Shown one piece after another: positions 4,561-56,412 of a stretch of DNA of 64,000 nucleotides. Both the position numbers and the translations under genes were made by a program. Location: positions 13,950,001 through 14,014,000 of the forward strand of contig OZ281499.1 in NCBI GenBank assembly GCA_965637545.1, read 5' to 3'. Position 1 is the first letter of the stretch; every line of letters begins with the position of its first letter. This stretch comes from Phallusia mammillata (taxonomy: Eukaryota). The notes beneath the pieces are model-generated. The model was not told the origin of the DNA, ran no database searches, and was given only the letters and a program-made list of their open reading frames with translations.

Positions 4561-5439
4561 TCGTGAAAATGTTACTTAACACTTTAGTTGAAAGTTCGTT
4601 TACAATGTTTGTTAAATAAAATTCCTGTTTCAATTAATTTGTGTTCCAATTCTATGGTTAAAAACTTTGCCCAAAAACGTTGGCCCGCAGGAGGATTGTC
4701 ATTCTGGCGAAATGAACGACGAAGATATGGAAAATTATTTTACGCACGACTGCACAAAATTTCACACAATTTTTAAGACTTTTAATTTTGCAGGTGCCGT
4801 ATTTCAACACAACCAGACGTCCGGAGTCACCCGTACATGTTTGGAAATGGCATAGATACCTGGACAGGATTTCTACCAATAAAACCATTTCTACCAATAA
4901 AACCACTAGAAATGTCCGAAATTTAGGGTACAATATTGTAAGGAATTTTTCAAAATCAGCAAAATTGCCAATTTGGGCAATTGAAAAAAAGAAAAATCAT
5001 CTGCTTTTTTTTCATTCCATATAAAAGCAAAAAATAACGACAACAGTAAATACAAAAGGTACACAGCATTTATGCTTCTGCTGTTCAATGCGCGGCATTT
5101 GTTGCACAACTTGGTGGTTCAGCACAGCTTGGTTTCTTTTATTGTTTTTAATGTGATGAATTTTAAGCACTCCTATACAGCAAAACAACCCTAAATAAAC
5201 TCCAATACCAAACACTTCTTCAAGCAATGAATTTCATTAACTCCAAAGTTCTGTGGCGGTCATTGTTACGTAGTTAATGCCTCGTGTCAGTATGGATACA
5301 TGGCGTGGACATGTTTCATTATTTCTGCGTTGTCGTTACGTTTGTACGTTGATTTTACCTTTCTAGTACTTCATTCAAAATTGTTGAAGTCAAAACTGTT
5401 GTTCTCGTTTAGGTAACACAAGTGTGTTGTTCAGTAAGC

Positions 5440-6420
5440 TAAGCAAGTCAGGAGCTTTGATAGGTGTGTTTAGCATGTGCAGCAGTGTACATTATTAGGT
5501 ATGAAGTTATAGCCTGTTTTAAACAATTCCCGAAAATCAGAATTGTATAAAAATGGGAAGAAATGTAGACGAAAGCATGCCTAAAACCTTGATAATAAAA
5601 TAAATTTGGCGCGATTAAAGAGTTTTCTGCAAAATAACTTTTTGTCAGACACCTATACAATTTAGCATGTGCATGCATTATTGCCTCTATGACGTAACAG
5701 TAGGAACCTTAAAGTTTAAAGCCTAATCTAAACACTTTCCGAAAATGAGAATTGAATAAAAGTTGGCAGAAATGTAGACCAAAGCATGCTTAAAACCTTG
5801 AAAGTAAAATAAATTTGGCGCGATTACAGAATTTTCAGCAAAATAACTTTTTGTCAGACACCTATACAATTTAGCATGTGCACCATTTTGGCTGTGACGT
5901 GACGGCTAAGCCCTTGAGTTTACAACTTTTTTCAAACACTTTCCGAAAATGAGAATTGAATAAAAATTGGCATAAATGTAGACCAAAGCATGCTTAAAAC
6001 CTTGGTAATAAAATAAATTTGGCGCGATTAAAGAATTTTCAGCAAAATAACTTTTTGTCAGACACCTATACAATTTAGCATGTGTATGCATTGTTGGCTA
6101 TATGACGTAACAGTAGGAACCTTAAAGTTTAAAGCCTAATCTAAACACTTTCCGAAAATGAGAATTGAATAAAAATTGGCAGAAGTGTAGACCAAAGCAT
6201 GCTTAAAACCTTGATAATAAAATAAATTTGGCGCGATTAAAGAATTTTCAGCAAAATAACTTTTTGTCAGACACCTTTACAATTTAGCATGTGTATGCAT
6301 TATTGGCTATATGACGTAACAGTAGGACCCTTAAAATTTAATGTAAACACTTGGAATTAAAAGGTTAAAAGCTCACTCTGAACACTTTCCGAAAAGTAGA
6401 ATTCTCTAAAAATTAAAATA
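5440..6420 (-). repeat. Left subterminal satellite array, ~4.5 copies of a 204-209-bp unit
   Basis: GGCGCGATT recurs at 5608, 5817, 6021, 6230. The array is the reverse complement of the right-arm array. Confidence 0.93.
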
Positions 6421-6534
6421 AGTGAAAGCTATTCGGTTATAGTTGCATTTGTAAACATTGCTCATTTATGCTATCGCAGAAAACATTGATTTATTATTCA
6501 ACTGAGAAATATTGAAAACCTTTTGTAAAACAAC

Positions 6535-7214
6535 ATGGGAAGACGAACGCCTGCTGTAAAATATTAGAAGGGAGTCAGTGGAAAACAAACAGGCTATCTC
6601 CGTGCTGACGGTTCACCACTTCCTTCTGTGTTGTTGGTGACGGACAGCAACGGAAGGAACCTTGTTTACCCACGGGTGGTATCATGTAACAGTGATTCAT
6701 TCGTTTTTAATGCAATTTCTCTTCCAGGTGGCCATATTGACCATGGATGCATCGAAGTGGAGTTTGGGCGAAAGTTCGGCAACGTCGACTTTGTGGTACT
6801 AGCACTTGGCACTAACGACGTTGATTCAGGCAAATCCATCGCCTGCGACGAAGCAGCTTACCGAAGCTTGGTTGAGGCGTCCTGCAGCGTGTACCCCAAA
6901 GCGCAGGTAGAATTGAGACAAAGGATTTTCCGTCAATTCAAGTAATAGTTGGTCAATATGGACGAATATTGTCGCAGATTATTGTGGCTGGAATTCTTCA
7001 GCAAAGGGGGATCACGGGCACCTTGTTCCAGAGATCAAAAAGGTGTTGCGCAACCTCGCCACGGGAATGGGCATCAGCTTCCTGGACTTTACCATCGGCC
7101 ATAATCGAGAGCTTTGGCACGACCGCCTACACTTGTCTGACGTCGGTTTGCGTCATTACATGGCCAGTCTTGAGGCTCATATTCATGCCCTTCTTGCTGC
7201 TTCCAGCGTGCCAA
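6535..7214 (+). pseudogene. SGNH/GDSL-fold hydrolase exons of the MULE polyprotein (exons 6535-6906 and 6978-7214)
   Basis: LLVTDSNG (block I), PGG (II), LALGTND (III), WHDRLHLS (V, 7121-7132). GT-AG introns 6907-6977 and 7215-7286. One in-frame TAG (6565) and a frameshift at the G-run 7006-7010. Confidence 0.75.
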
Positions 7215-7465
7215 GTGAGTAGTTGTGTTATTTAAATTTTGATGGTTGATCCCTAAATATAACCATAATATATTTCAATATTTTAGAAAAAATGTTGGGC
7301 TTTGCCGAAACCGACGGAATAAAGATAACGAAGAAGAAGAAATTCCGAAGTCGGCTGTGTTTTGGATGTGTGGCTGACCACATTCGTCCCTCATCCAAAA
7401 AGGCTAATCGGGACATCACACAAACGCCTTTTCCCAGCTTTGATGCCACCAGAAGAGTTTCGACT

Positions 7466-7780
7466 GGAGCGAAGGGCAAGGTGGCTGAGGTTGCTGGACC
7501 CCCTAGCAAAGCTGACGGTGGAGCGAGGGGCAAGGTGACTGAGGTTGCTGGACCCCCTAGCAAAGCTGACGGAGGAGCGAAGGGCAAGGTAGCTGCAGTT
7601 GCTGGACCCCCTAGCAAAGCAGAACGTGGAGCGAAGGGCAAGGTGGCTGAGGTTGCTGGACCCCCTAGCAAAGCTGACGGTGGAGCGAAGGGCAAGGTAG
7701 CTGCAGTTGCTGGACCCCCTAGCAAAGCTGACGGAGGAGCGAAGGGCAAGGTAGCTGAGGTTGCTCGACCCCCTAGCAAT
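7466..7780 (+). repeat. Coding tandem repeat, 54 bp x ~5.8 (GAKGKVAEVAGPPSKADG)
   Basis: Units start at 7466, 7520, 7574, 7628, 7682, 7736, in frame within ORF 7292-8527. Confidence 0.95.
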
Positions 7781-8657
7781 GGCAACACAGGAAATCTTTC
7801 AGAGCTTGTTTCGTTTGTGCTGCTGCTGCTAAATGTTGCCGGACTTGTGATTTTCTGCCTGGGTCTGTTCAGTTTGTTTTATTTTGATTTTATACTGTAT
7901 GGTTTGAGTTCCACCGGCTTACCTCAATTACTTAAATTCGCCATTGGTCTAACGAAAATTGTTTTTAGCTGGATACTACAATCACGTCGGTTTCGTGGAA
8001 CATTGAAGCAAAGACAAAGAAATCTTTATCGAAAAAAAAAATGTTTAAAACAACGACCAGGTATCAATTTGCCATTTACTTCTCATTTGCTACATCTGCC
8101 TAAAATTGTTAAAATTGGGGGTGGGCCACAAAAGGCAAATTTCGCCGAGACTGTTAAAGTCATTTCGGATTACATGACCCAGCACAACTTACAAAAATTT
8201 AATCGAGACCGTAGTTTAGGATTGCTGCGCGAAAGTCACTTGTGGAAAAATATGCCAATAATGAAGCGGTTTAGGTTTTTACAAAGCTTTTGCAGCAAGC
8301 ACCGCGACGTAATTAGTAAAAACCTATGTTCACTTTCGGTAACCGTTTTGAACAAGGATGTTTTTGTTGACGATCAAAACAAGATTGATAACGGTCCAAT
8401 TATCGCTTTGGCGAAATGCTTAGACCATTATCCAAATGTTTCAAAGTTGCCATACCGAGCGGTAAAAGCTTTTTTGGAGTCATCCGCTTTAGCCGTAAAT
8501 TCAAAAAATCGACAGAGTTTGCAATAGATGGATAACTGACTTAAGATTCAGACAGGCTGTTCAGCACTCTTATACTGAAATAAATGGAGATTGCGATGTT
8601 GTTGTCAAACAATCTGAAAATAGTTCAGTCACTAATTCACTTAACGAATCCATTACG

Positions 8658-8760
8658 TATTGTGTTTGTCAAACCCCTTATGATGGTCGGTTAATGGTTG
8701 AATGCGAAACTTGCTCACAGTGGTATCACCCCAGTTGCGTATTTGATTGTTGTTCTCCCG
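8658..8760 (+). pseudogene. PHD finger of the MULE polyprotein
   Basis: YCVCQTPYDGRLMVECETCSQWYHPSCV; the frame is open upstream of the annotated 8694 start. Confidence 0.85.
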
Positions 8761-9399
8761 CAGTTACGTTTTCGGCTGTCGAGTGGAATCGTACTCATAT
8801 GGTTTGTCCTAATAGCAGGCATCGTTTTAGATCGTTTTATGAACACAAAATAATGGACTTAACAGATGGGCCCGAATCTGTTAAAAATAACTCGCCAGTA
8901 ACTGTTTTAAGTAATATTTTAGAGAGTTCGTCGTCTTGTGACCCCTCTGTCGTTTCTCCTACCTTACCAAAGACTGAATTTTGTGTATTGCCAGTGGCCA
9001 ACGATTCTTTGTCTCATTCTGTTACTATTAACGGCGAGAATGATCATTTAGTTTTGTATGAAAACGCTGAGTCGAACAAAACGCTTACTGAAGAATGTGT
9101 TGATAGTACTTGTAGCGACTTTTTGAGTGAGGATTGTTTTGTGGATAATGTTTTTGATGAACTTGGAAAAATAAATGACGCAACAAGATCAGAATATAAA
9201 CACAACGATGATATTAACATACAAGAAAAGTTTATTATTTCATTGCAAGAATGGCACTCTATGGTTAAAAATAGAAAAACAAACCACTTCCATGGTTCTC
9301 GATACGTTGAAATCACGTTGCATTACTTGCATCAAATTTATAGCGGTTGTGTGCCTAATGTAAAAAATAAATACCTGATTGATCCAAATGGAGTTGTTG

Positions 9400-11000
9400 C
9401 AATTTCTAAAGCAGATAAATGCTACAAGGAAGGTTGGATAAATTTTTACTGTGGTCATCAAAATTGTGAGACTTGTAATTGCGAAACTAAATTAGTGGTA
9501 ACGTTTTGGTCGTTTGTTGACAGAGTTGGAGGGCATGTTGAAATAAGTGGTAAAAGAAATCATCGTCCCGGATGTAAACGTAGTAGGCGTTGCTGTGGGC
9601 CAATGAGGAAAAAGCTTCGCAAATCTTTACAGAACCAAACCGCTGTTAAAAAATATAGGGAAATTTACGATGGCATGAAACCGGAGGAACGATGGTTAGG
9701 GGCCCACACTTTTTTACCGTCACAATCTGTATTAAATAATATTAAAAGTGAAAGTAATTATGGTCACCGAAAAAGCAAACTCTGGTTTATAAACCTCAAT
9801 TCGATTGGAAATGGATGAAAAACAAAATCGTTTTGTAAGAGTAATAAGTTTACACCCCCCAATGGTAATCCTGTACATAGATGCACCGATAAAAATCTTT
9901 CATCGCACTTGCATGTTTGACGTGGTTTACTTCAATGCGACCGGAAGTATTTTATGCCGCCTTCAAAATTACTCTGATTTCCAAGTTTACACTTTACTTA
10001 TTCGAAACCCGACACCAGGGAGCACACCGCTACCTGTTGCTACGTGCGTAACAAGTCACCACGACGCCAATACAATTAGTCACTTTTTAGAAAACTTTTT
10101 ATTTGATGCGGTAAAATTGTGTGGGACAGCGAAAAAACCCAAGTTGATAGTAATTGATGGCTCAATGGCAATGTGGAACGCTGTTTTAAAAGCAATGTGT
10201 CGCGAATCGCGCTTAGATTATTACAGGCGTTGTTACAGAATTGTAACAGGTGTACCTGGCGATTCCGACCTGCAAAAAAACATTTGTTGCCAATTGCTAT
10301 AGCCACGCTATGAAAGCAGCAAAAATTTTGTGTGGTAAATACTGCAAAAACAAAAAACTAGTCAAAACCTACTTGTTTTGGATAAACGTCATGTTTTCGT
10401 GTTCGACCGTTAAAGAGTTAGACGAAGCAGTAGAAAGCTTTTTCATTTTAACCAACAGCGAAGCTTCTTCCTCATTGGTCGAATTGCATTTTAAAAGACT
10501 TAAGTCACAAGGTCAGTCGCAATCCGCTCGGTTCGACCATGACAATGACGGCAAAACAGTTACAGACGAAACCGACTATTTTTTTACTGCAAAAGCATCG
10601 GACAAGTTGCAAGAAAGTCACTCACCCTTCTATGCCAGATACAAACGAAAATTAGATACCGTTCTTAAAACAATATCTGATTCTACACCACCGACCCAAA
10701 TGCATACAAATATATACCATAACACTGAGATTTCGAGTAAAGTTTTGGAAATAACTTTAAGCAGAATCTGTTCTACTTCAAAATTTATGCTTGGAGATTT
10801 GTCCCGACATATGCACAAAGGCACAACTTCCGGTGATCAATCGCTAAAGTACAAACAGCATAGTGATATATGTAACAACCTTAAACAACTAGGCCATCAA
10901 AGCATTTTGAAGAACAACCGAACCCAAGGAATTATTGAACAACATTTTGGAGATTTAAAAACAAATGTGATAGATTGGAAACGAATTGCTAAAATTGACG
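9400..11000 (+). pseudogene. NOF/Rehavkus-type Mutator DDE transposase core
   Basis: Cys/His-rich region (CGHQNC..GKRNH), VYFNATGS (expected Asp reads Asn at 9934), PLPVATC..HH, LIVIDGSMA (10156), CYSH (10295-10306), QGIIEQHF (10937). Frameshifts near 9810 and 10275. Confidence 0.8.
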
Positions 11001-11489
11001 ACTTCGTTGTAAAGTATTATCAAGCCATAATGATTTTGCAAAAACTGTTTGCTGACTCCCACATTTATCTTAAATCCACCCAAAATCGTACTTCGAGCAA
11101 GAAACTATTGACTCCTGTGATTGAGTCAAAATTTAGAAAAAGAAAACGCAAACGAACAAGTTATTACTCTTCAGATACTGCTTTTAAGCAGCTACAATAC
11201 CGGAATGAAACTTCGAAAGAAACAGGAATGTCCCCTAGTCCTTTCACGGCACGATTTGCTTTTTGCCCTGACCCGGAAATATTGATTTCAATTTGCAAAC
11301 CTGTTGCAGATTTCATTTGGCACCAAATTCTCCACAACACCCAGTCCATATTTGAAACTGCAATAATCACTAAATGGCGCCATTCATTGTCATGGTTGGA
11401 CATGTGTTCGGTTTGCCCAAAACCAAGGGGCAAAACGTATATTGCGCTTACTGAAAATTTTGCTCGTTCTCACAACGATGCGACGCTTG

Positions 11490-12075
11490 GGTGGTTAACG
11501 GATAAAGTTGTAGATTGCTATATTACTAGAACTGTCGCCATATGTAATTCGATTTCGCCTGGTAAATTTGCATGTGTGTCAAGTGTTTTAGCTTCTGAAA
11601 TTTTAAGTGGAAAATAATTAAAAACATGCAACGAGCATTAAAAGGAATAATAAACAGTGACGGACAGTTATGTGAAAATGTTGTTTTACCCGTTTTGTAT
11701 GAAAATCATTTTGTTGTGTTGTGGTTAAGTCAGTTGAATAATACTCTAGTTCTGTACGACTCGGTTGTTTCCAGCAGCGATCGCTTGAAAAGTTTAGTAA
11801 ACAAATACCTTATTCCAGCCCTTAAATGTATAACTGACCAGGACATTACATTTACAAGTGATTCGACAGTCGTTCAGCAAGACCAGTCTAGTTGTGGATT
11901 ATGCGTTTGTTATACAGTTGATCGCCTTGCATCAGCCATTCTTGAGATGATTCGACAGTCGTTCAGCAAGACCAGTCTAGTTGTGGATTATGCGTTTGTT
12001 ATACAGTTGATCGCCTTGCATCAGCCATTCTTGAGATTCGCCATGTAAACTTTGACGTTACGAACTATCGAGTTT
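11490..12075 (+). pseudogene. Ulp1/SENP-like (C48) cysteine protease domain
   Basis: WLTDKVVDCY, PVLYENHF (His 11707), LYDS (Asp 11758), QQDQSSCG (Cys 11893). Confidence 0.82.
11860..12037 (+). repeat. Exact 89-bp tandem duplication disrupting the Ulp1-USP frame
   Basis: 11860-11948 is repeated at 11949-12037; removing one copy puts ORFs 11626 and 12078 in the same frame. Confidence 0.95.
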
Positions 12076-12077
12076 GG

Positions 12078-13661
12078 TTGGTGTACGCATTGGTTCAAGA
12101 TTCATTAAGTTGTAACTTAAAAATAATAAATTTCTCGAAGAAGAAAACTGGGGTCTCAGTTGGTCTTCCAAACAAGTTTAATAACTGCTGGATGAATTCT
12201 GTACTGCAGGGTATACAAAGTATATTTGTAGATTTACCGAGTGTTTTAATTGATTGTAACGATCTAAATGGGAGAGTTGCGAACGTAATTTGCGACCTCC
12301 GACGAGGGAAAGTGGAAGAGGCAGCTTACCTTCGGTTAGTCCGCGATATGTGTTGTCATCTTGGTTGGGTTCTCGGCCAACACCAAGATGCAAGTGAATT
12401 TTTGCAAATCTTTGATTTCAATTATGTTTTGAAAGGTTGTAATTTAGATTGTACGTTTCAGCTACATATAACAAAAACGTGTAAGTCATGTGACCAACAA
12501 TCTAATATTCTTCATAAACAATCGGTTTTAGCTTTGCCAGTTTTTGAAACAATTCCAGATAATAGCAATATAAATGCATACTGTGAAGAGAAATTTCGTG
12601 GCGTGAAGTTAGGTTTTTGTGCTAGTTGCAACTTGGAAAAGGAAATCGTTTTTGAATCACACCTAGAAAATGTATCAGATATTTTGTGCGTTGTTTTGCA
12701 TAGAAACATAACAGGCCAAAAAACAACCAAACGCGTAAAAGCCACACAATTGTTGTCGTTTAAATCCGCTTCAGAAGAGTATGTTTACCAGTTAATGTCT
12801 GTTGTTGTTCACGTCGGAACGAAAGTTGATTCTGGGCATTACATTACCTACAAAATTAATGGCGATAAAATAACTGAACTTAACGATTTGGTAGTAAAAG
12901 ACATGTTTTGGGACTCTGTTGAGGAAAATATTTCCACAGGATCTTGTATTTTGTTTTATCGAAAAAAATCAGTGAATGCACTTTGTAAAGATCAATCCTC
13001 TGAAAGTGACGAGGGTGATCAAACGATTAAAGTAGTCCCTAGAAAGCGTCGTCGTATGGACGCATCAGCCGTTGTCACTACGGAACGAATAGATTATAGG
13101 GACATAGAATTAATGCAGACAGACAGCAAGGGAGAGGTAGTGGCGCTTTCTGGTCCAGAGATACTTGAAGCTTCCGTAGCAGAAGTTTACAAATTTGTCA
13201 ATTGTCAGCTTTTGTCCGCTATGTCAAAGTCGTTTGAGGTCGGCAAACATGAACTTGAGTGTTATCGTTTATGCCTTTTTTCGAAAAACCGTAGAAAGCA
13301 GTTGACCGGTTACAACTTAAGGTCAACTTTGGAAAAAACATCATTGTTAACAGACACGTTTCAAAACCTAATGCGATTTTTAGATTATTCACTTTGTCGA
13401 TTTCGCGTCCGACAACGTCTTATGGGTAAGCAAGTATATAGGGAAACAAGTGTTTGCAAGGAGTTGAAGCCAGAAATAGCCATCCAAGGAAGCATTATTC
13501 ACAGTTTGCTTCAGGTTGAAACATTCGACATATCTTTTTTACCAACAATGTGTTATAAGTTACATGGAAGCAGCCATTTACTACATAATGCATGTCGAAA
13601 GTTTAACGTATATGAAAGCGTCCAAACGAATAGGAATTTCGGCAGTAGCATATGTGAATAA
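12078..13661 (+). CDS. Ubiquitin-specific protease (C19) domain plus unknown C-terminal region; C-terminus of the MULE polyprotein
   Basis: GLPNKFNNCWMNSVLQ (Cys 12186), QHQDASEFL, CKSC..CASC, VVHVGTKVDSGHYITY (His 12837), ELND. 527-aa open frame. Confidence 0.88.
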   Translation: MVYALVQDSLSCNLKIINFSKKKTGVSVGLPNKFNNCWMNSVLQGIQSIFVDLPSVLIDCNDLNGRVANVICDLRRGKVEEAAYLRLVRDMCCHLGWVLGQHQDASEFLQIFDFNYVLKGCNLDCTFQLHITKTCKSCDQQSNILHKQSVLALPVFETIPDNSNINAYCEEKFRGVKLGFCASCNLEKEIVFESHLENVSDILCVVLHRNITGQKTTKRVKATQLLSFKSASEEYVYQLMSVVVHVGTKVDSGHYITYKINGDKITELNDLVVKDMFWDSVEENISTGSCILFYRKKSVNALCKDQSSESDEGDQTIKVVPRKRRRMDASAVVTTERIDYRDIELMQTDSKGEVVALSGPEILEASVAEVYKFVNCQLLSAMSKSFEVGKHELECYRLCLFSKNRRKQLTGYNLRSTLEKTSLLTDTFQNLMRFLDYSLCRFRVRQRLMGKQVYRETSVCKELKPEIAIQGSIIHSLLQVETFDISFLPTMCYKLHGSSHLLHNACRKFNVYESVQTNRNFGSSICE

Positions 13662-15044
13662 AATGTAAATTGATACCGTTTTTTTATTGTGTGTATTGAC
13701 ATTCATATATTTTAAAAACACCTAAACCCTGAAATATTGAATAAATTTAAACTGGAGATTGTGTGTTAATTATTTTGCACTGTTTCGGTAAATAAACCAT
13801 GCACATCGATACTGCTGTACATTATATAATTCTCCGACAAACATATATTGAAAGTTCTTTAATCGCGCCAAATTTATTTTATTACCAAGGTTTTCAGCAG
13901 GCTTTGGTCTACATTTCTGCCAATTTTTATTCAATTCTCATTTTCGGAAAGTGTTCAAAAAAAGTTGTAAAACTCAAGGGCTTAGCGGTCACGTCGTAGC
14001 CAAAATGGAGCACATGCTAAATTGTGTAGGTCTCTGACAAAAAGTTATTTTGCTGAAAATTCTTTAATCGCGCCAAATTTATTTTACTGTCAAGGTTTTA
14101 AGCATGCTTTGATCGACATTTCTGCCAATTTTTATTCAATTCTCATTTTCGGAAAGTGTTTAAATTCAGCTTTAAACTTTAAGGTTCCTACTGTTACGTC
14201 ATATAGCCAATGATGCATACATGTTCTGAATGGTATAGGTCTCTGACAAAACGTTATTTTGCGAAAAATTCTTTAATCGCGCCAAATTTATTTTATTACC
14301 AAGGTTTTAAGCATGCTTTGGTCTACATTTCTGCCAATTTTTATTCAATTCTCATTTTCGGAAAGTAAAGACTTAGCCGTCTCGTCACAGCCAAAATGGT
14401 GCACATGCTGAATTGTATAAGTCTCTGACAAAAAGTCATTTTGCTGAAAATTCTTTAATCGCGCCAAATTTATTTTATTACCAAGGTTTTAAGCATGCTT
14501 TGGTTTACATTTCTGCCAACTTTTATTAAATTCTCATTTTCGGAAAGTGTTCAAATTAGGCTTTAAACTTTAAGGTTCCTACTGTTACGTCATATAGCCA
14601 ACAATGCATACACATGCTAAATTGTATGTGTCTGACAAAAAGTTACTTTGCTGAAAATTCTTTAATCGCGCCAAATTTATTTTATTACCAAGGTTTTAAG
14701 CATGCTTTGGTCTACACTTCTGCCAATTTTTATTCAATTCTCATTTTCGGAAAGTGTTTAGATTAGGCTTTAAATGTTAGGGGCCTACTGTTACGTCATA
14801 GCCAATAATGCATATACATGCTGAATTGTATAGGTGTCTGACAAAAAGTTACTTTGCTGAAAATTCTTTAATCGCGCCAAATTTATTTTATTACCAAGGT
14901 TTTAAGCATGCTTTGGTCTACACTTCTGCCAATTTTTATTCAATTCTCATTTTTGGAAAGTGTTTAAATTCAGCTTTAAACTTTAAGGTTCCTACTGTTA
15001 CGTCATATAGCCAATGATGCATACATATTCTGAATGGTATAGGT

Positions 15045-15969
15045 CAGGGGCGGGCAACTTCTACAGTCGGCGGGCCTGATATGGGAAAATGAAGTACTTG
15101 GCGGGCCGGATTCCTGAATCGATACATTAATCGCGTATTTATCCAATGATTTAAAACGGATTTTTGACCACCTAAACCAGGGGTGGGGAACCTTTTCGTT
15201 TATAAAAGCTACCTAACGATTTATCGACACTCGTGTAGGCCGCATAGACTATTTCCCAGGCCAAGGGCAGTGAGGTTCAAACTTTTTGACTTACACAATG
15301 GTCGTTTTGCTATTTCCTCGTAGTTTGTAGGACTTACGGTCCCAGCTAATTAAAATTCCTCACTACATTTTCATCTTCACTACAACATTCAGGATTTATT
15401 TAACCTAGAAATTGCTGAACCTGGAGTTTTTGGTAGTCCTAACTATGGAAATCGCTTTATGTACCACTATGGGACCACATGGGTCTTGTTTGAAAACCGC
15501 TGCCCTGGAACTAATCAAAAAATAATCTGCAATAAAGTCAAAAATACGTTTCTGTCTATTTTTTTCAGCGCCTGGTGCAGTCGGTTATATCAACATCTTA
15601 AAAATGTATTTTGCCATCGAAGGCCGCACTTAGTGCCCTGAAAGACCGCATGTGGCCTTTAGGCCGCAGGTTCCCCACCCCTGCCTGAACTAGGCTATAC
15701 GTGTGGAAACAAAGAAAACCGTTAAAGTAGGACACACACGGTTGGTAGTTATGTCGTAACAATGGACGTATGGTGCAATGGTAACAACGGCGGGAAATTT
15801 TTTTGCTATTGGGGAGCGTTACTGTGCGTTACAACTGTAATTTGACGTAGTAAGCAAGTAATGGGGGATTGCGGCAGACTGTGGCCGCGGGCCACATTAT
15901 CATGTAAGACCGGAAACTGTCCGCGGGCCGCTCAAAATCCCGTCGCGGGCCGTATGTTGCCCACCCCTG
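15045..15969. mobile_element. hAT MITE inserted in the satellite
   Basis: TIRs CAGGGGCGGGCAAC / GTTGCCCACCCCTG; TSD GTATAGGT at 15037-15044 and 15970-15977. Confidence 0.92.
15178..15683. mobile_element. hAT MITE nested in the previous MITE
   Basis: TIRs CAGGGGTGGGGAACC / GGTTCCCCACCCCTG; degenerate flanks CCTAAAC / CCTGAAC. Confidence 0.85.
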
Positions 15970-18434
15970 GTATAGGTCTCTGACAAAACGTTATTTTGCG
16001 AAAAATTCTTTAATCGCGCCAAATTTATTTTATTACCAAGGTTTTAAGCATGCTTTGGTCTACATTGCTGCCAATTTTTATTCAATTCTCATTTTCGGAA
16101 AGTGTTCAAAAAAAGTTGTAAAACTCAAGGGCTTAGCGGTCACGTCGTAGCCAAAATGGAGCACATGCTAAATTGTGTAGGTCTCTGAAAAAAGTTATTT
16201 TGCTGAAAATTCTTTAATCGCGCCAAATTTATTTTACTGTCAAGGTTTTAAGCATGCTTTGATCGACATTTCTGCCAATTTTTATTCAATTCTCATTTTT
16301 GGAAAGTGTTTAAATTCAGCTTTAAACTTTAAGGTTCCTACTGTTACGTCATATAGCCAATGATGCATACATATTCTGAATGGTATAGGTCTCTGACAAA
16401 ACGTTATTTTGCGAAAAATTCTTTAATCGCGCCAAATTTATTTTATTACCAAGGTTTTAAGCATGCTTTGGTCTGCATTTCTGCCAATTTTTATTCAATT
16501 CTCATTTTCGGAAAGTAAAGACTTAGCCGTCTCGTCACAGCCAAAATGGTGCACATGCTAAATTGTATAAGTCTCTGACAAAAAGTCATTTTGCTGAAAA
16601 TTCTTTAATCGCGCCAAATTTATTTTATTACCAAGGTTTTAAGCATGCTTTGGTTTACATTTCTGCCAACTTTTATTAAATTCTCATTTTCGGAAAGTGT
16701 TCAAATTAGGCTTTAAACTTTAAGGTTCCTACTGTTACGTCATATAGCCAACAATGCATACACATGCTAAATTGTATGTGTCTGACAAAAAGTTACTTTG
16801 CTGAAAATTCTTTAATCGCGCCAAGTTTATTTTATTACCAAGGTTTTAAGCATGCTTTGGTCTACACTTCTGCCAATTTTTATTCAATTCTCATTTTCGG
16901 AAAGTGTTTAGATTAGGCTTTAAATATTAGGGGCCTACTGTTACGTCATATAGCCAACAATGCATACACATGCTGAATTGTATAGGTGTCTGACAAAAAG
17001 TTACTTTGCTGAAAATTCTTTAATCGCGCCAAATTTATTTTATTACCAAGGTTTTAAGCATGCTTTGGTCTACACTTCTGCCAATTTTTATTCAATTCTC
17101 ATTTTCGGAAAGTGTTTGAAAAAAGTTGTAAACTCAAGGGCTTAGCCGTCACGTCACAGCCAAAATGGTGCACATGCTAAATTAAATAGGTCTCTGGCCA
17201 TAAGTTATTTTGCTGAAAATTCTTTAATCGCAAATTTATTTTATTACCAAGGTTTTAAGCATGCTTTGGTCTACATTTCTGCCAGTTTTTATAGAATTCT
17301 CATTTTCGGAAAGTGTTTAAAATCAGTTGTAAAATTCAAGGGCTTAGCCGTTACTTCACAGACAAAATGGTGCACTTGCTAAATTGTATAGGTCGCTTAA
17401 AAATCATAATTGGAGATCCAGATCAAAACGGTATTTTTTTTTCTATCAAAAAAAAGAAGTTGTTTTTAACATTAAAATATATTAGTTTTTGGAAACACTG
17501 CAGAAAAATATTTCTTCTTTCTCCCTATTTTCATTTCGCCAGAATGACAATCCTCCCGCAGGCATATAGACCTGATAAAAAATGGCCCCCATTAAAAAAA
17601 AGTTTGGACACCCCTGTAGTAGATCATGACCATGAGGATGGAAGTTTAACTAATCTCTCTGTAAAAAAAGAAAAAATCACAGTTTAGCAAATGATCCAGG
17701 TTTGTGGCTTGATTTCTCTGCTGATGATGTGGCTTATTGGATCGCCTGTGGACCCAGTAACGCCAACACCACAATGGACCATTTGAAGTCTTACCGGCGT
17801 TTTAGTAGTGGCAAACCAGTAGTACGGTACTGTTCACAGAAACTGTTTATCGGGACAAAAGTCAATGGTGAAAAATACAAGAGAGAGTGATTACTGTATT
17901 CACTATCAACAGGATCAATTTATTGTTTTGTTTGTAAACTTTTTGCTCCAAAAATATCGCGTATTGTAATTGACAATCATGGGAAAGGCTTCAATCGTCG
18001 AAACTCTCTGTTAACATATTTAACTCGCAGACAAGTTTCGAGGTTGGATTCACAATTGGAGAAACAAATTCAAGATTAGTGTGATTCCTGGGAACATGTC
18101 TTGAGGCGTGTCATAGCTGTTATTTGTACGTTAGCTGAACGCTGCTTGGCTTTTCGGGGATCAGACGACATGTTTGGATCATTGCACAACGGGAATTTTT
18201 TAGGAGTGCTTGAACTCATCAGCCAGTTTAATCCATTTTTAGCAGGCCACATTTCTAAATGTGGAAATTCTGGAAGAGGAAATACTTCTTACTTGTCAAA
18301 ACCACCTGCGAGGAAATTATTGAACTGATGGCACAAAAGGTCCATGCGTTCTTGTTGACGAAGTTAAGTCTTCTGGTTGTTTTAGTCTGTCCGTTAATTA
18401 AACACGAGATCTATCACATATCGATCAGCTAAGG

Positions 18435-54329: not shown

Positions 54330-56412
54330 TTAGTGGTTCATTTTTTTGCTGCGATGTTTTCTTCTCCTTTTTTTGACCTCGCTTTTTCCCTGCACCTCCT
54401 GAGGGCAGACGTGTAAGAAGGGAATTATCAGTGGACGATTGGTGTTTGTTTTGTTTTATTCAGTCTAAATTTTGAAAAATTAAGCAAGTATTAAAGCTTC
54501 TCCGAATCGGAATTCTTGGACCATTCATTGATCGGCATAGCAAAATGCTCATAACCTGGCGCCAGATGAAAGGGTCCAAGGTTAACTATCGCTTTTGTTA
54601 TTTCTTTATACTGAGCTTTCACAACGCCATAGATCTGATCGATGAGTTTGGGGATCTTTTGTTGTTTCCAGCCTGATTTGCATTTGAGGACATGATTAAG
54701 GGATTCGCTGTTGTTGTTTGTCCAAATGTTTCCAATTAGTGGCATTTTTCTCCATTGCTTTTCTTTTGCTGTTTCTAAAAATCTAACTAAATACGGCCTA
54801 GCCAAAGGTTGATCATTGCATATTTGGAGAATTTCTGCACATTTAACGTCAAATTCATCCTCAGTGGTGGATTTGATTAGGTCGCCGTACATTTGTAACA
54901 AACTGTTGCGACGTTTTTCTTCAGCGCCCATTATATCGCGAAAGAATCGCGTCACGTCATCCTTTAGATGTTCATTGCATAAAACATGATTACAGCCCGA
55001 AAAGGCACGAGTTGCTGCTTTATGCATAGCTTTCTCGTCGTCCGAACCAAAAATTAGGTTGTCAAAATCATCATCTAAAACCACACTTAAATTTCCAAAA
55101 AAGTCAAAGAACGCTTGATAGTCTGACTTGTTGTGTAAAAACAAAGGCCCAAAGAAAATTGGATGTCCTCCCGTTTTAGTCCGCACAACACCCAAATGCT
55201 TAACTGTTGTAACAGTGACGAAAATGGGACCCAAATTAAACGTTTTGTCTGCTCCCAAAACTGTCTTGCCAGTAAGGCAAAATCGTCGCAAATCAAGTAC
55301 TTGTTCATCCAAATATAAATGAATGCTGGTGGGCGTGTCTTTGCCGTGTGACACTTTACGTACGAACTCATGGGTGGCTGTCATGCTGATGACCTTTAGA
55401 ATATCGTCAGCGTAATTTTTTGCGTGCGATGCCGGAGATGTTTTTGTTTTCTGGTCGTTGTATTTTTTTCTGTGGAACTGCTCCAAATTTCTCACGCCAT
55501 CAATCAGATTATCAGACTGTTGCAGTTCGTCATAAAGGTCCTTGGCACCCTGACCCCTTGACAAACAATCTCCAATTTTGTTTAAAACATCAGGGCGAGT
55601 TCTTACGTAAACATTTTTTATTTATTTTGAATTGCCGTGATGTGTATGCCCTGGATGCTTTCCTATGTATTCTGCTATAAAAACTGTTTTAAATTCTTGA
55701 TCCAAGTACTTTTCCAACCAGCATATTTTTCTTTTGTGGGACGTGTCATTTGCTAATTTGGCATAATAGCTACCAAGTATTATAATTTCGTTTTCATTGG
55801 GCTGTGGTTCCAAAATATTGTAGGTGCCCTTTCTTGGATTTCTAACAGTGTATTGTTTTTGAAAAATTCTTATTTCCACCAGATTTTCGCCGTTCTTCCA
55901 ATAAATAATTCTACTGTATGGTAAGCTACACCATGTTCCACAATCATCGTGAATTTTTTTGTTAATTGCTGCCCTTATTCGGTTGACATTTGTATTGTTG
56001 TTGACTATAAAAACACGCTTTCTTTCGCTCCCGCTGGGATTTCTTCCAGCGGTGCAAGTTTTGCTACAACCTGACGCGTTGGTAAAAATGTCTCGTATTC
56101 CAATACCCCCCTTTGGGACCCAAATTTGTCATTTTCTTCGGGCGTTTCTTCACAACTGTACGAATCTGAAGATTGAATATCTTCGCAAACCACCGACTCC
56201 TGTAAAGTATCACTTAACACTGCGGAAGATATTTGTGGAGACGAGTGAGTTGGAATCACAGCAACAAAATGATTTGGAGTCCAAACAGAAGTTTTTGAGG
56301 GCCCCACTCTTGACCACATTATGTTAATGGGGTCGCGATCATCAAAATCATCAACTGCTATGATGCGATTAAGGATTTCTACTACTTGGTCTTGTTGACC
56401 ATTGCATGGAGG
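54330..56412 (-). pseudogene. MULE-type DDE transposase preceded by the C-terminal part of a Vertnin/OTU-like domain
   Basis: INIMWSR..WTPNHFVAV; HHGNSK; VLGADKTFNLG, FGSDDEKAM, HVLCNEH, WTNNNSESLNHVLK. Confidence 0.8.

What the first reader, a model, noticed from the sequence alone, without database searches (positions are those of the whole stretch)
6535..7294. Spliced SGNH hydrolase at the N-terminus of a DNA transposon protein
Seen: all four SGNH blocks (Ser, Gly, Asn, DxxH). The second intron (7215-7286) splices in phase into ORF 7292 (A|AA AAA ATG), supporting a true exon structure. Known: SGNH-like esterase domains occur in ORF1p of some CR1/L2 LINEs. Inference: capture from a LINE or host; possible deacylase/lipid-binding role in a cut-and-paste element.
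Basis: partly seen in the sequence, partly recalled or inferred. Interest (0 to 1): 0.7.

Follow-up and report, generated by a model that had tools for sequence, protein, structure and literature searches.

The report
Esterase exons heading a Mutator-type transposase
A cut-and-paste "jumping gene" starts its giant transposase gene with two short exons that encode a conserved lipase/esterase-type (SGNH) enzyme domain. Such a domain was known from retrotransposons, but I found no report of one in a DNA transposase, and the copy in this window is a broken one.

Summary
Window 6535-7294 carries two exons (6535-6906, 6978-7214) with all four SGNH blocks, then a 72-nt intron that leads in phase into the long transposon ORF.

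The window copy is dead: a TAG at codon 11, a 1-bp deletion after 7010, and breaks further downstream. Other copies are intact.

The same two-exon module heads at least six diverged transposon families in this genome:
- Intron 1 lies at the same codon boundary in 11 loci, always GT..AG, 63-846 nt long.
- The catalytic residues are invariant.
- dN/dS is 0.05-0.26.

A contiguous homologue from another species passes Pfam's GDSL threshold and folds as an SGNH hydrolase (Z 17-18 to PAF-AH Ib and TesA).

In the chromosome-4 copy, exon 3 is a 1718-codon open frame whose first Met is at codon 368. The SGNH exons most likely supply the start codon, which would make one fusion protein.

The host element (4692-17554) has 25-bp TIRs and 8-bp TSDs. 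Its DDE core is structurally closest to the IS256-family transposase ISCth4, so it is Mutator/Rehavkus-like.

Not shown: splicing in RNA (the only contigs that cover intron 1 retain it), enzyme activity, and origin. The domain lacks the His/Ser pair specific to LINE esterases.

Earlier notes of this scan had recorded SGNH modules on other pieces of this genome.

The parts
4684..4691 (.). Left target-site duplication, 8 bp (CCCGCAGG)
   Evidence: The identical 8-mer follows the right end at 17555-17562. The chromosome-4 copy also has an 8-bp TSD.
4692..4716 (+). Left terminal inverted repeat (25 bp), start of the element
   Evidence: It is 25/25 complementary to 17530-17554. Other copies begin here.
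5520..6341 (.). Left subterminal array of ~209-bp repeats
   Evidence: Tandem Repeats Finder (TRF) finds 4 copies. The array is inverted relative to 13851-17394.
6535..6906 (+). Exon 1: start codon and SGNH Blocks I-III (124 codons). Broken here by a TAG at 6565-6567.
   Evidence: Pfam Lipase_GDSL_2 at 22 bits. The exon is intact in L003, L002, L040 and others.
6907..6977 (+). Intron 1 (71 nt, GT..AG, phase 0)
   Evidence: The same position carries GT..AG in 11 loci of 6 families, at 63-846 nt, with at least 2 in-frame stops if retained. Identity between subfamilies is 56-77%, against 90-97% for the exons.
6978..7214 (+). Exon 2: C-terminal third of the SGNH domain with Block V (D 7121-7123, H 7130-7132). 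Frameshifted here by a 1-bp deletion after 7010.
   Evidence: The extra A after 7010 is seen in other copies and in DNA contigs. Pfam 14 bits on profile positions 126-175 for the intact copies.
7215..7286 (+). Intron 2 (72 nt, GTGAGT..TTTTAG, phase 1)
   Evidence: Its length is 72, 79, 83 or 85 nt in different copies. In the chromosome-4 copy only its removal links the exon-2 frame to the 1718-codon ORF.
7287..8527 (+). First stretch of exon 3: a basic/Cys-rich motif, 18-aa tandem repeats (7465-7779), a ~40-residue hydrophobic segment (7790-7909) and a polybasic tract
   Evidence: ORF list; TRF period 54; Kyte-Doolittle scan, which finds the only such segment in the 1718-aa chromosome-4 ORF.
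8661..8741 (+). PHD-type zinc finger
   Evidence: Pfam PHD at 22.4 bits, below the cut-off of 24. The same sub-threshold hit occurs in the chromosome-4 ORF and in P0001 and P0002.
9805..11617 (+). DDE transposase core (frame broken in the window; the first catalytic Asp is Asn at 9934-9936)
   Evidence: Conserved D...D...CxxH...E motifs with P0001-3. The AF2 model of the chromosome-4 core matches the ISCth4 (IS256-family) transposase best, at Z 12.7.
11626..12048 (+). Ulp1-like C48 protease remnant, with a perfect 89-bp tandem duplication at 11859-12037
   Evidence: Pfam Peptidase_C48 at 16.2 bits, sub-threshold; TRF.
12078..13661 (+). Ubiquitin C-terminal hydrolase (UCH/USP) domain
   Evidence: Pfam UCH at 44.6 bits, above the cut-off.
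13851..17394 (.). Right subterminal ~205-209-bp repeat arrays, interrupted by a foreign 910-bp high-copy repeat at 15045-15955
17530..17554 (-). Right terminal inverted repeat, end of the element
17555..17562 (.). Right target-site duplication (CCCGCAGG)

Best explanation
The stretch is the 5' end of the single large gene of a Mutator/Rehavkus-like cut-and-paste transposon (window 4692-17554).

Two short exons encode a complete SGNH (GDSL-type) serine esterase domain with an intact Ser, Gly, Asn and Asp-x-x-His set. A phase-1 intron then joins them to a very long third exon. That exon encodes, in order:
- a basic Cys-rich motif;
- 18-residue tandem repeats;
- a ~40-residue hydrophobic, membrane-type segment;
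- a PHD finger;
- the DDE transposase;
- a Ulp1-type protease;
- a ubiquitin hydrolase.

The esterase is an old, selected part of this transposon lineage, not a passenger.

Shown: domain identity, fold by homology, exon structure from comparing copies, purifying selection, and linkage to the transposase.

Inferred: that the three exons are spliced into one mRNA and one polypeptide; that the esterase is active; and that it works at a membrane next to the hydrophobic segment. There it would hydrolyse or bind an acyl ester (a lipid or an O-acetyl group), as the LINE ORF1p esterase does, to help the transposase reach or stay at the nuclear envelope or chromatin.

The window copy is a decayed pseudogene.
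For: SGNH identity:
- Each exon hits Pfam Lipase_GDSL_2 collinearly.
- An exon-1 profile finds only 59 proteins at E<=1e-3 among 1.84 billion.
- Among them are contiguous homologues that pass Pfam's cut-off of 32.9 bits: P0009 at 41.6, P0010 at 41.7 and P0046 at 37.9.
- A whole-domain profile hits PAF-AH Ib at 1.6e-8 and the ZfL2-1 ORF1p esterase 4c1b at 5.5e-7.
- The AF2 model of P0009, aligned with the element's exons as rows, has pLDDT 89.7. It matches SGNH hydrolases at Z 16-18 over 160-180 residues.

Exons:
- Exon 1 ends and exon 2 begins on adjacent columns of contiguous homologues.
- Intron 1 has GT..AG at the same codon boundary in 11 loci of 6 families, and in gene models of another species.
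- Between subfamilies the introns diverge and carry indels, while the exons stay 90-97% identical with no indels.

Selection: dN/dS is 0.05-0.26, with an excess of third-position changes. The catalytic residues are invariant across sequences only 38-45% identical.

Fusion:
- In the chromosome-4 copy exon 3 is 1718 codons without a stop.
- Its first Met is at codon 368.
- It lies in a different frame from exon 2 and is bridged exactly by the 85-nt intron.
- The conserved basic/Cys motif lies upstream of any Met in the chromosome-4 copy.

Transposon: TIRs, 8-bp TSDs in two copies, deletion derivatives, and a fold match to ISCth4.

Hydrophobic segment next to the esterase.
Against: - No transcript evidence. 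Contigs of runs X1 and X3, whose type is only guessed to be RNA, cover 6476-7159 and 6673-7217 with intron 1 retained. No spliced joint was seen.
- The joined exon model was not searched or folded, by rule, so the fold rests on a homologue that is 42-44% identical to exon 1.
- In the window's own subfamily an ATG sits right at the start of exon 3, so the transposase could be translated without the esterase.
- If intron 2 is retained, a stop follows within 2-4 codons. That would give a stand-alone esterase of about 205 aa, which is how the short gene models P0009 and P0012 read.
- The more distant transposase relative P0001 shows no SGNH within 10 kb upstream.
- No fully intact autonomous copy of this family was found. 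The chromosome-4 copy lacks about 870 bp of the UCH region.
- Activity, substrate and membrane association are untested.
Confidence: 0.7

Rival explanations
1. The esterase is a separate product of the transposon, not a fusion with the transposase. Exons 1 and 2, with intron 2 retained or with their own polyadenylation site, would give a stand-alone SGNH protein of about 205 aa. The transposase would be translated from another transcript or from an internal start, as in two-gene Mutator elements.
For: - A stop follows the intron-2 donor within 2-4 codons in all copies read.
- Gene models P0009 (218 aa) and P0012 (210 aa) in another species end just after the domain.
- The window/chromosome-5 subfamily has an ATG at 7292, right after the acceptor.
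- Short derivatives keep only the esterase end.
Against: - The chromosome-4 copy has no Met in the first 367 codons of an open, conserved exon 3.
- The intron-2 donor and acceptor, and the phase compatibility, are kept while intron length varies between 72 and 85 nt.
- The motif just after the acceptor is conserved between families.
- Both products could exist through alternative splicing.
Confidence: 0.2
2. The domain was taken from the ORF1 esterase of a CR1/L2-type LINE.
For: - The exon-1 profile reaches a true LINE ORF1p, P0060, at E 6.6e-4. P0060 has an APE+RT ORF2 downstream.
- The solved LINE esterase 4c1b is the third-best PDB hit.
- LINE ORF1 proteins also combine esterase and PHD domains (PMC4120745; Kapitonov and Jurka 2003, as cited in PMC5408684).
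Against: - The two residues that Schneider et al. give as specific to transposon-encoded LINE esterases are not kept. H191 is Ala in all 13 sequences. S228 is Ala in this family and Cys or Gly in others. P0060 has the His, and 4c1b has both residues (PMC3905857).
- Host-type PAF-AH Ib scores better.
- There is no coiled coil before the domain.
- The introns argue against a recent retro-derived source.
Confidence: 0.15
3. It is a captured host-gene fragment carried as a passenger (Pack-MULE style) with no role for the element.
For: Mutator-like elements are known to pick up host gene pieces (PMC6446971). The window copy is itself broken.
Against: - The module sits at the same place in at least six families whose esterase exons are only 38-70% identical at the protein level.
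- dN/dS is 0.05-0.26 and the catalytic residues are invariant.
- An exon-2-like piece also lies upstream of a 35%-identical transposase on a marine metagenome scaffold.
Confidence: 0.05

Closest known systems
SGNH esterase of LINE ORF1 proteins (ZfL2-1 ORF1p, PDB 4c1b; CR1, L2, RTEX clades; Schneider et al. 2013, PMC3905857)
   Same: Both are transposon-encoded SGNH domains with conserved catalytic residues, placed at the 5' end ahead of the element's enzyme. There is a significant profile match (5.5e-7). Both are linked to a likely membrane or lipid context: liposome binding in ZfL2-1, and an adjacent hydrophobic segment here.
   Different: - The host element is a cut-and-paste DDE transposon, not a retrotransposon.
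- The domain is probably fused to the transposase rather than sitting in a separate gag-like ORF1.
- There is no coiled coil.
- It lacks the LINE-specific H191/S228 pair.
- It is split by introns.
GDSL esterase/lipase ORF3 of bdelloid LTR retrotransposons and Athena/Terminon retroelements (PMC5408684, PMC6431247)
   Same: An accessory SGNH enzyme recruited by a mobile element, with catalytic residues intact. The authors propose roles in membrane passage.
   Different: Those are separate ORFs in retroelements and, as the authors note, lack transmembrane or coiled-coil parts. Here the domain lies in a DNA transposon next to a hydrophobic segment.
Platelet-activating-factor acetylhydrolase Ib catalytic subunits (PDB 1fxw, 1es9, 1wab)
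   Same: The best profile hit (1.6e-8, covering Blocks I-V) and among the best fold matches (Z 17.6-17.7).
   Different: It is a cellular enzyme that stands alone. Identity is only about 15-21%. No orthology is shown.
Mutator/Rehavkus DNA transposons with PHD and Ulp1 domains (PMC6446971, PMC2836005)
   Same: TIR element with a minisatellite before the 3' TIR, a PHD finger and a Ulp1 protease in one large transposase, and a DDE core nearest to the IS256-family fold.
   Different: - Neither of these two papers contains the word esterase, so no esterase domain is described for these elements there; targeted searches likewise found no cut-and-paste transposase with an esterase domain.
- The TSD is 8 bp rather than the 9 bp listed for Rehavkus.
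- Pfam MULE models do not hit.
- There is an extra UCH protease.
- The size is 13-18 kb.
SGNH hydrolase gene captured by a Helitron in platyfish (PMC4021074)
   Same: An SGNH gene mobilised by a DNA transposon.
   Different: That is a captured host gene carried as cargo in one species. It is not an integral, conserved exon pair of the transposase gene.

Membership tests
SGNH/GDSL hydrolase superfamily (Pfam PF13472 Lipase_GDSL_2) | Block I nucleophile Ser in a G/T-D-S-type motif | tested here: met
   T-D-S-N with the Ser codon at 6646-6648. D-S-N is invariant in 13 sequences from 6 families.
SGNH/GDSL hydrolase superfamily (Pfam PF13472 Lipase_GDSL_2) | Block II Gly and Block III G-x-N (oxyanion hole) | tested here: met
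   P-G-G and G-x-N are invariant. Window coordinates are 6724-6732 and 6808-6816.
SGNH/GDSL hydrolase superfamily (Pfam PF13472 Lipase_GDSL_2) | Block V D-x-x-H | tested here: met
   D and H are invariant in 8 exon-2 sequences. In the window they lie at 7121-7132, but in a frame shifted by the 1-bp deletion.
SGNH/GDSL hydrolase superfamily (Pfam PF13472 Lipase_GDSL_2) | Profile score above Pfam's gathering cut-off (32.9 bits) | tested here: inconclusive
   The element's exons, scored apart, give 18-22 and 14-15 bits on collinear parts of the model. The joined protein was not scored, by rule. Contiguous homologues P0009, P0010 and P0046 pass at 37.9-41.7 bits.
SGNH/GDSL hydrolase superfamily (Pfam PF13472 Lipase_GDSL_2) | Three-layer alpha/beta/alpha SGNH fold | tested here: met
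   Tested on homologue P0009 (E 2e-25 to the exon-1 profile), with the element's exons in the alignment. pLDDT is 89.7 and Z is 16-18 to PAF-AH Ib, TesA/TAP and GDSL lipases. The element's own spliced protein was not folded.
SGNH/GDSL hydrolase superfamily (Pfam PF13472 Lipase_GDSL_2) | Esterase activity | not testable with these tools
   Needs an enzyme assay.
Transposon-encoded LINE ORF1p esterases (Schneider et al. 2013) | His at ZfL2-1 position 191 (four residues before the Block III Asn) | tested here: not met
   Ala in all 13 exon-1 sequences. His is present in 4c1b and in LINE ORF1p P0060.
Transposon-encoded LINE ORF1p esterases (Schneider et al. 2013) | Ser at ZfL2-1 position 228 (strand after Block III, partner of H191) | tested here: not met
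   It aligns to Ala in families A and B, Gly in D and Cys in E and F.
Transposon-encoded LINE ORF1p esterases (Schneider et al. 2013) | Gag-like ORF1 upstream of an APE/RT ORF2, with a coiled coil before the esterase | tested here: not met
   Downstream lie a DDE transposase, a C48 and a UCH domain, and no RT. The esterase starts at residue 1.
Mutator superfamily (MULE, Rehavkus group) | Terminal inverted repeats and target-site duplication (9 bp listed for Rehavkus, 8-11 bp in MULEs) | tested here: inconclusive
   25-bp perfect TIRs. The TSD is exactly 8 bp in the window copy and in the chromosome-4 copy. The chromosome-5 derivative has no matching flanks.
Mutator superfamily (MULE, Rehavkus group) | DDE transposase related to IS256-family transposases | tested here: met
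   The AF2 model (pLDDT 76) matches ISCth4 best. Foldseek gives E 5e-5 and probability 1.0, and VIA gives Z 12.7 over 240 residues, ahead of Hermes at 10.5 and integrases at about 9. The link between IS256 and Mutator is from my own knowledge.
Mutator superfamily (MULE, Rehavkus group) | Match to Pfam MULE/Transposase_mut models | tested here: not met
   No such hit at E<=1 for the chromosome-4 ORF, P0001 or P0002. None of the 14 database relatives (P0001-3, P0063-73) carries a precomputed MULE/Transposase_mut domain.
Mutator superfamily (MULE, Rehavkus group) | [quoted passage not shown] | tested here: met
   There are 205-209-bp arrays at 13851-17394 before the right TIR. The PHD hits of 18.7-22.4 bits fall just under the cut-off of 24, but recur in all relatives.

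The most novel reading that the evidence does not exclude
A membrane-tethered SGNH esterase is a working, ancestral module of a cut-and-paste DNA transposase, recruited independently of the LINE and LTR esterases. That would mean a lipid or membrane step matters for DNA transposons as well as retroelements. Candidates for that step are nuclear-envelope access, anchoring at the inner nuclear membrane, or passage between cells.
Probability: 0.25. Interest if true: 0.8.

Novelty: new variant of a known kind. Interest (0 to 1): 0.6.

Why it matters
Esterases of the SGNH type turn up repeatedly in retrotransposons: LINE ORF1p, rotifer LTR elements and Penelope-like elements. Their role is still unknown, and the leading idea is membrane or lipid targeting of the RNA-protein particle.

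Here the same kind of enzyme is conserved, under selection, at the head of a DNA transposase, which has no RNA intermediate. It sits next to a hydrophobic segment and lies in one gene with two deconjugating proteases.

This separates the esterase's role from reverse transcription and RNP packaging. It also gives a second, independent system for testing what the esterase does for a mobile element. It shows too that giant Mutator/Rehavkus-like elements assemble several hydrolases into one gene.

Tried and rejected
- **Read evidence.** The runs that hold the stretch are of unknown type. Their contigs retain intron 1 and stop near the intron-2 donor. This neither supports nor refutes splicing.
- **Per-exon profile searches of PDB sequences.** Only weak hits (E 0.03-1.5), with SGNH entries among unrelated ones. 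They were not usable alone. The whole-domain profile built on contiguous homologues was needed.
- **Protein atlas look-ups.** The machine was busy and gave no result.
- **Joining the exons.** I did not search or fold the spliced protein, because a spliced model had to be handled exon by exon. A natural contiguous homologue served instead.
- **TSD in the chromosome-5 derivative.** The flanks do not match, so TSD length rests on two other copies.
- **Exon 1 on the Tara scaffold L075.** It was not found in the 1 kb available upstream of the exon-2-like piece.
- **SGNH near P0001.** None within 10 kb.
- **Contiguous homologues as cDNA evidence.** P0009, P0010 and P0012 are gene models on genomic DNA with introns, not transcripts.
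- **Origin tree.** I did not build a whole-domain tree against host SGNH genes. No host PAF-AH sequences were available by reference, and exon 1 alone (126 columns) would not resolve it.
- **Chance motif, unspliced frameshifted pseudogene, and host gene outside the element.** All three are rejected.
Full report
**What is in the window.** Reading 6400-7400 in three frames gives an ATG at 6535 and an open frame that carries T-D-S-N, P-G-G and G-T-N-D. A donor CAG|GTAGAA follows at 6906/6907 and an acceptor CGCAG|ATT at 6977/6978. The second exon contains D-R-L-H. A donor CAA|GTGAGT lies at 7214/7215 and an acceptor TTTTAG|AAA at 7286/7287. Two defects are specific to this copy. Codon 11 is TAG (6565-6567), and one base is missing after 7010, so Block V lies in another frame from Blocks I-III.

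**Copies elsewhere.** The genome (240 Mb) holds many copies. An alignment of eleven of them shows GAG instead of TAG at codon 11 and an extra A after 7010 in all the others. The chromosome-4 copy (L003) and the chromosome-5 copy (L002) have both exons open. The window copy is therefore a decayed member of a family with intact relatives. It also has Asn for the first catalytic Asp of the transposase (9934-9936), an 89-bp perfect duplication in the C48 region, and several frame breaks.

**Are the introns real?**
- Between the two subfamilies (L002 against L003), exon 1 is 90% and exon 2 is 97% identical, with no indels. Intron 1 is 77% identical (56% if gaps count) and intron 2 is 73% (60%). Exon 1 differences fall 7/5/24 on codon positions 1/2/3.
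- A protein search of the genome with exon 1 found the same module in at least six diverged families, at 38-97% protein identity to L003.
- In 11 loci, intron 1 sits at the same codon boundary. It always begins GT and ends AG, measures 63, 70, 71, 75, 94, 99, 281 or 846 nt, and would introduce at least 2 stops if retained.
- When the exons are aligned as separate rows with contiguous database homologues, exon 1 ends at column 190 and exon 2 starts at column 191, with nothing missing or doubled.
- Gene models of another species (assembly GCA_964204865.2; best match in this genome is only 43-51%) have an intron at the same spot.
- Intron 2 varies between 72, 79, 83 and 85 nt. In the chromosome-4 copy only its removal connects the exon-2 frame to the following ORF.

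**Transcripts.** One search for sequencing runs and one laying of contigs were allowed. Runs X1 and X3 are of unrecorded type ("RNA?" is a guess). Their contigs match 6476-7159 and 6673-7217 perfectly with intron 1 retained, and no spliced joint appeared. They may be DNA or unspliced RNA of this dead copy. The junctions therefore have comparative support only.

**Is it an SGNH hydrolase?**
- Scored apart, exon 1 hits Pfam Lipase_GDSL_2 at 18-22 bits on profile positions 63-103. Exon 2 hits the same model at 14-15 bits on positions 126-175. The cut-off is 32.9.
Instead, an exon-1 profile (A2) was run against 1.84 billion proteins. Only 59 hits reached E<=1e-3.
- Among them are contiguous proteins with both halves of the domain: P0006, P0007, P0009, P0010 and P0012. 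P0009, P0010 and P0046 pass the Pfam cut-off.
- A profile of the whole domain (A4) hits PAF-AH Ib beta at 1.6e-8 and the ZfL2-1 ORF1p esterase 4c1b at 5.5e-7. The identity of 4c1b is confirmed in PMC3905857.
- AlphaFold2 on P0009 with alignment A4 gave pLDDT 89.7. Foldseek lists only SGNH hydrolases at probability 1.0. VIA-align gives Z 16-18 over 160-180 residues to PAF-AH Ib, TesA/TAP and GDSL lipases.
- The invariant columns across all families are exactly the catalytic blocks.
- dN/dS between subfamilies is 0.05-0.26 where dS is not saturated.

**Is it part of the transposase protein?** In the chromosome-4 copy, exon 3 is one open frame of 1718 codons (L035:247-5400, minus strand). Its first Met is at codon 368, after the repeats and the hydrophobic segment. 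A conserved basic Cys-containing motif just after the acceptor is shared with diverged families. This argues that translation starts at the exon-1 ATG. Against a strict fusion, the window's subfamily has an ATG at 7292, and retaining intron 2 would end the protein a few codons after the domain. A stand-alone esterase could therefore be made as well. I put the fusion at about two in three.

**The host element.**
- Genome matches, inverted repeats and tandem repeats and the ends define an element at 4692-17554.
- It has 25-bp perfect TIRs, 8-bp direct repeats (CCCGCAGG) on both flanks, and ~209-bp subterminal arrays in inverted orientation. The right array is much longer and is interrupted by a foreign 910-bp high-copy repeat.
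- The chromosome-4 copy is 18.2 kb, with its own 8-bp TSD.
- Deletion derivatives on chromosomes 5, 6 and 8 keep the ends.
- Pfam finds a PHD finger (sub-threshold), C48 (sub-threshold in the window) and UCH, but no transposase model.
- Relatives are few: 3 long and 11 shorter proteins at 32-58% identity, none of which carries a transposase domain.
- An AF2 model of the core (pLDDT 76) matches the IS256-family transposase ISCth4 best. Foldseek gives 5e-5, and VIA gives Z 12.7 against 10.5 for Hermes and about 9 for integrases. IS256 is the bacterial relative of Mutator; this is my own knowledge.
- The PHD finger plus a minisatellite before the 3' TIR are the marks given for Rehavkus elements (PMC6446971). 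Ulp1 and PHD in animal Mutator transposases are on record (PMC2836005). The 8-bp TSD differs from the 9 bp listed there.

**Where did the esterase come from?**
- Schneider et al. name two residues, H191 and S228, that are conserved only in transposon-encoded LINE esterases. H191 lies four residues before the Block III Asn. That position is Ala in all 13 sequences here, but His in 4c1b and in P0060.
- I showed that P0060 is a LINE ORF1p, by the APE+RT ORF downstream.
- S228 aligns to Ala, Gly or Cys here.
- The domain therefore does not carry the LINE signature, and the source (host or other) stays open.
- The association with this transposase is old. An exon-2-like piece (E 3e-16) lies upstream of the 35%-identical transposase P0002 on a marine metagenome scaffold.
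- Other database proteins combine C48 with SGNH (P0058), or SGNH with C48 and PHD (P0011).

**How it may work.** After the esterase come 18-residue repeats (6 copies in the window, about 15 in the chromosome-4 copy). They are followed by the only strongly hydrophobic segment of the 1718-residue protein (about 40 residues, Kyte-Doolittle up to 2.9) and then a polybasic tract. The segment recurs in another family. [quoted passage not shown] By analogy, I take the module to be an active esterase held at a membrane. This is inference; nothing here tests activity or location.

**Literature.** Searches for SGNH/GDSL or esterase domains together with DNA transposases, Mutator or Ulp1 found several related cases:
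- LINE, LTR and Penelope-like esterases;
- a Helitron-captured SGNH gene (PMC4021074);
- Ulp1/OTU/UCH in DNA transposons.

None of them is a cut-and-paste transposase with an esterase. The library is incomplete and Repbase reports are not covered, so this is absence of a found report, not proof of novelty.

**Earlier notes of this scan.** They had read the element as a giant MULE polyprotein. On other pieces of the genome they had seen SGNH-Ulp1-PHD modules and an SGNH-plus-TM cassette. One note gave the Rehavkus lead and called the host a sea squirt. I tested the Mutator and Rehavkus marks myself, but not the host's identity.

Noticed in passing
window 15045-15955: A 910-bp repeat with at least 40 genomic copies at 95-99% identity is inserted into the right subterminal array. 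It looks like a recently active short non-autonomous element.
   Followed up: no
window 11859-12037: A perfect 89-bp tandem duplication (2.0 copies, 100%) lies inside the Ulp1-like region and breaks the frame. It is a very recent event in a dead copy.
   Followed up: no
window 9934-9936: The window copy has AAT (Asn) where the chromosome-4 copy and all database relatives have the first catalytic Asp of the transposase.
   Followed up: partly
window 7790-7909 (and L035 ORF residues 319-361): A hydrophobic segment of about 40 residues sits between the esterase with its repeats and the rest of the transposase, followed by a polybasic tract. A membrane-type segment inside a transposase is unusual.
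   Followed up: partly
window 7465-7779: An 18-residue (54-bp) coding repeat has 5.8 copies here and about 15 in the chromosome-4 copy. Other families carry unrelated repeats at the same place, so repeat number and sequence evolve fast while the position is kept.
   Followed up: partly
L069 (G000:C5:3203400-3209300): The chromosome-5 deletion derivative has unlike 8-mers on its two flanks, so no TSD, and a 2-bp gap in its left TIR. It may be a recombinant or rearranged copy.
   Followed up: no
L050, L051, L052 (chromosomes 1, 2 and 6): Three identical copies of a family-D locus have intact esterase exons separated by an 846-nt intron. I did not determine whether they are transposon copies or a duplicated host gene.
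   Followed up: no
L075:1033-1260 (Tara metagenome scaffold): An exon-2-like SGNH piece with D-x-x-H lies about 3 kb upstream of the predicted start of a 2074-aa PHD-transposase-C48-UCH protein that is 35% identical to this element's.
   Followed up: partly
P0058, P0011 (database proteins): Proteins from other sources combine a Ulp1 C48 protease with an SGNH domain, or SGNH with C48 and PHD. The pairing of esterase and SUMO-type protease recurs.
   Followed up: partly
window 6476-7225, runs X1 and X3: Small public runs of unknown type hold contigs identical to this dead copy, including its stop codon. The contigs end within 3-11 bases of the intron-2 donor. The cause is unknown; it could be a branch in the assembly graph or a real end.
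   Followed up: no
window 54330-56412: An earlier first-reader note of this scan (unchecked) reports a second Mutator-like element with an OTU-like domain in the same window. I did not examine it.
   Followed up: no
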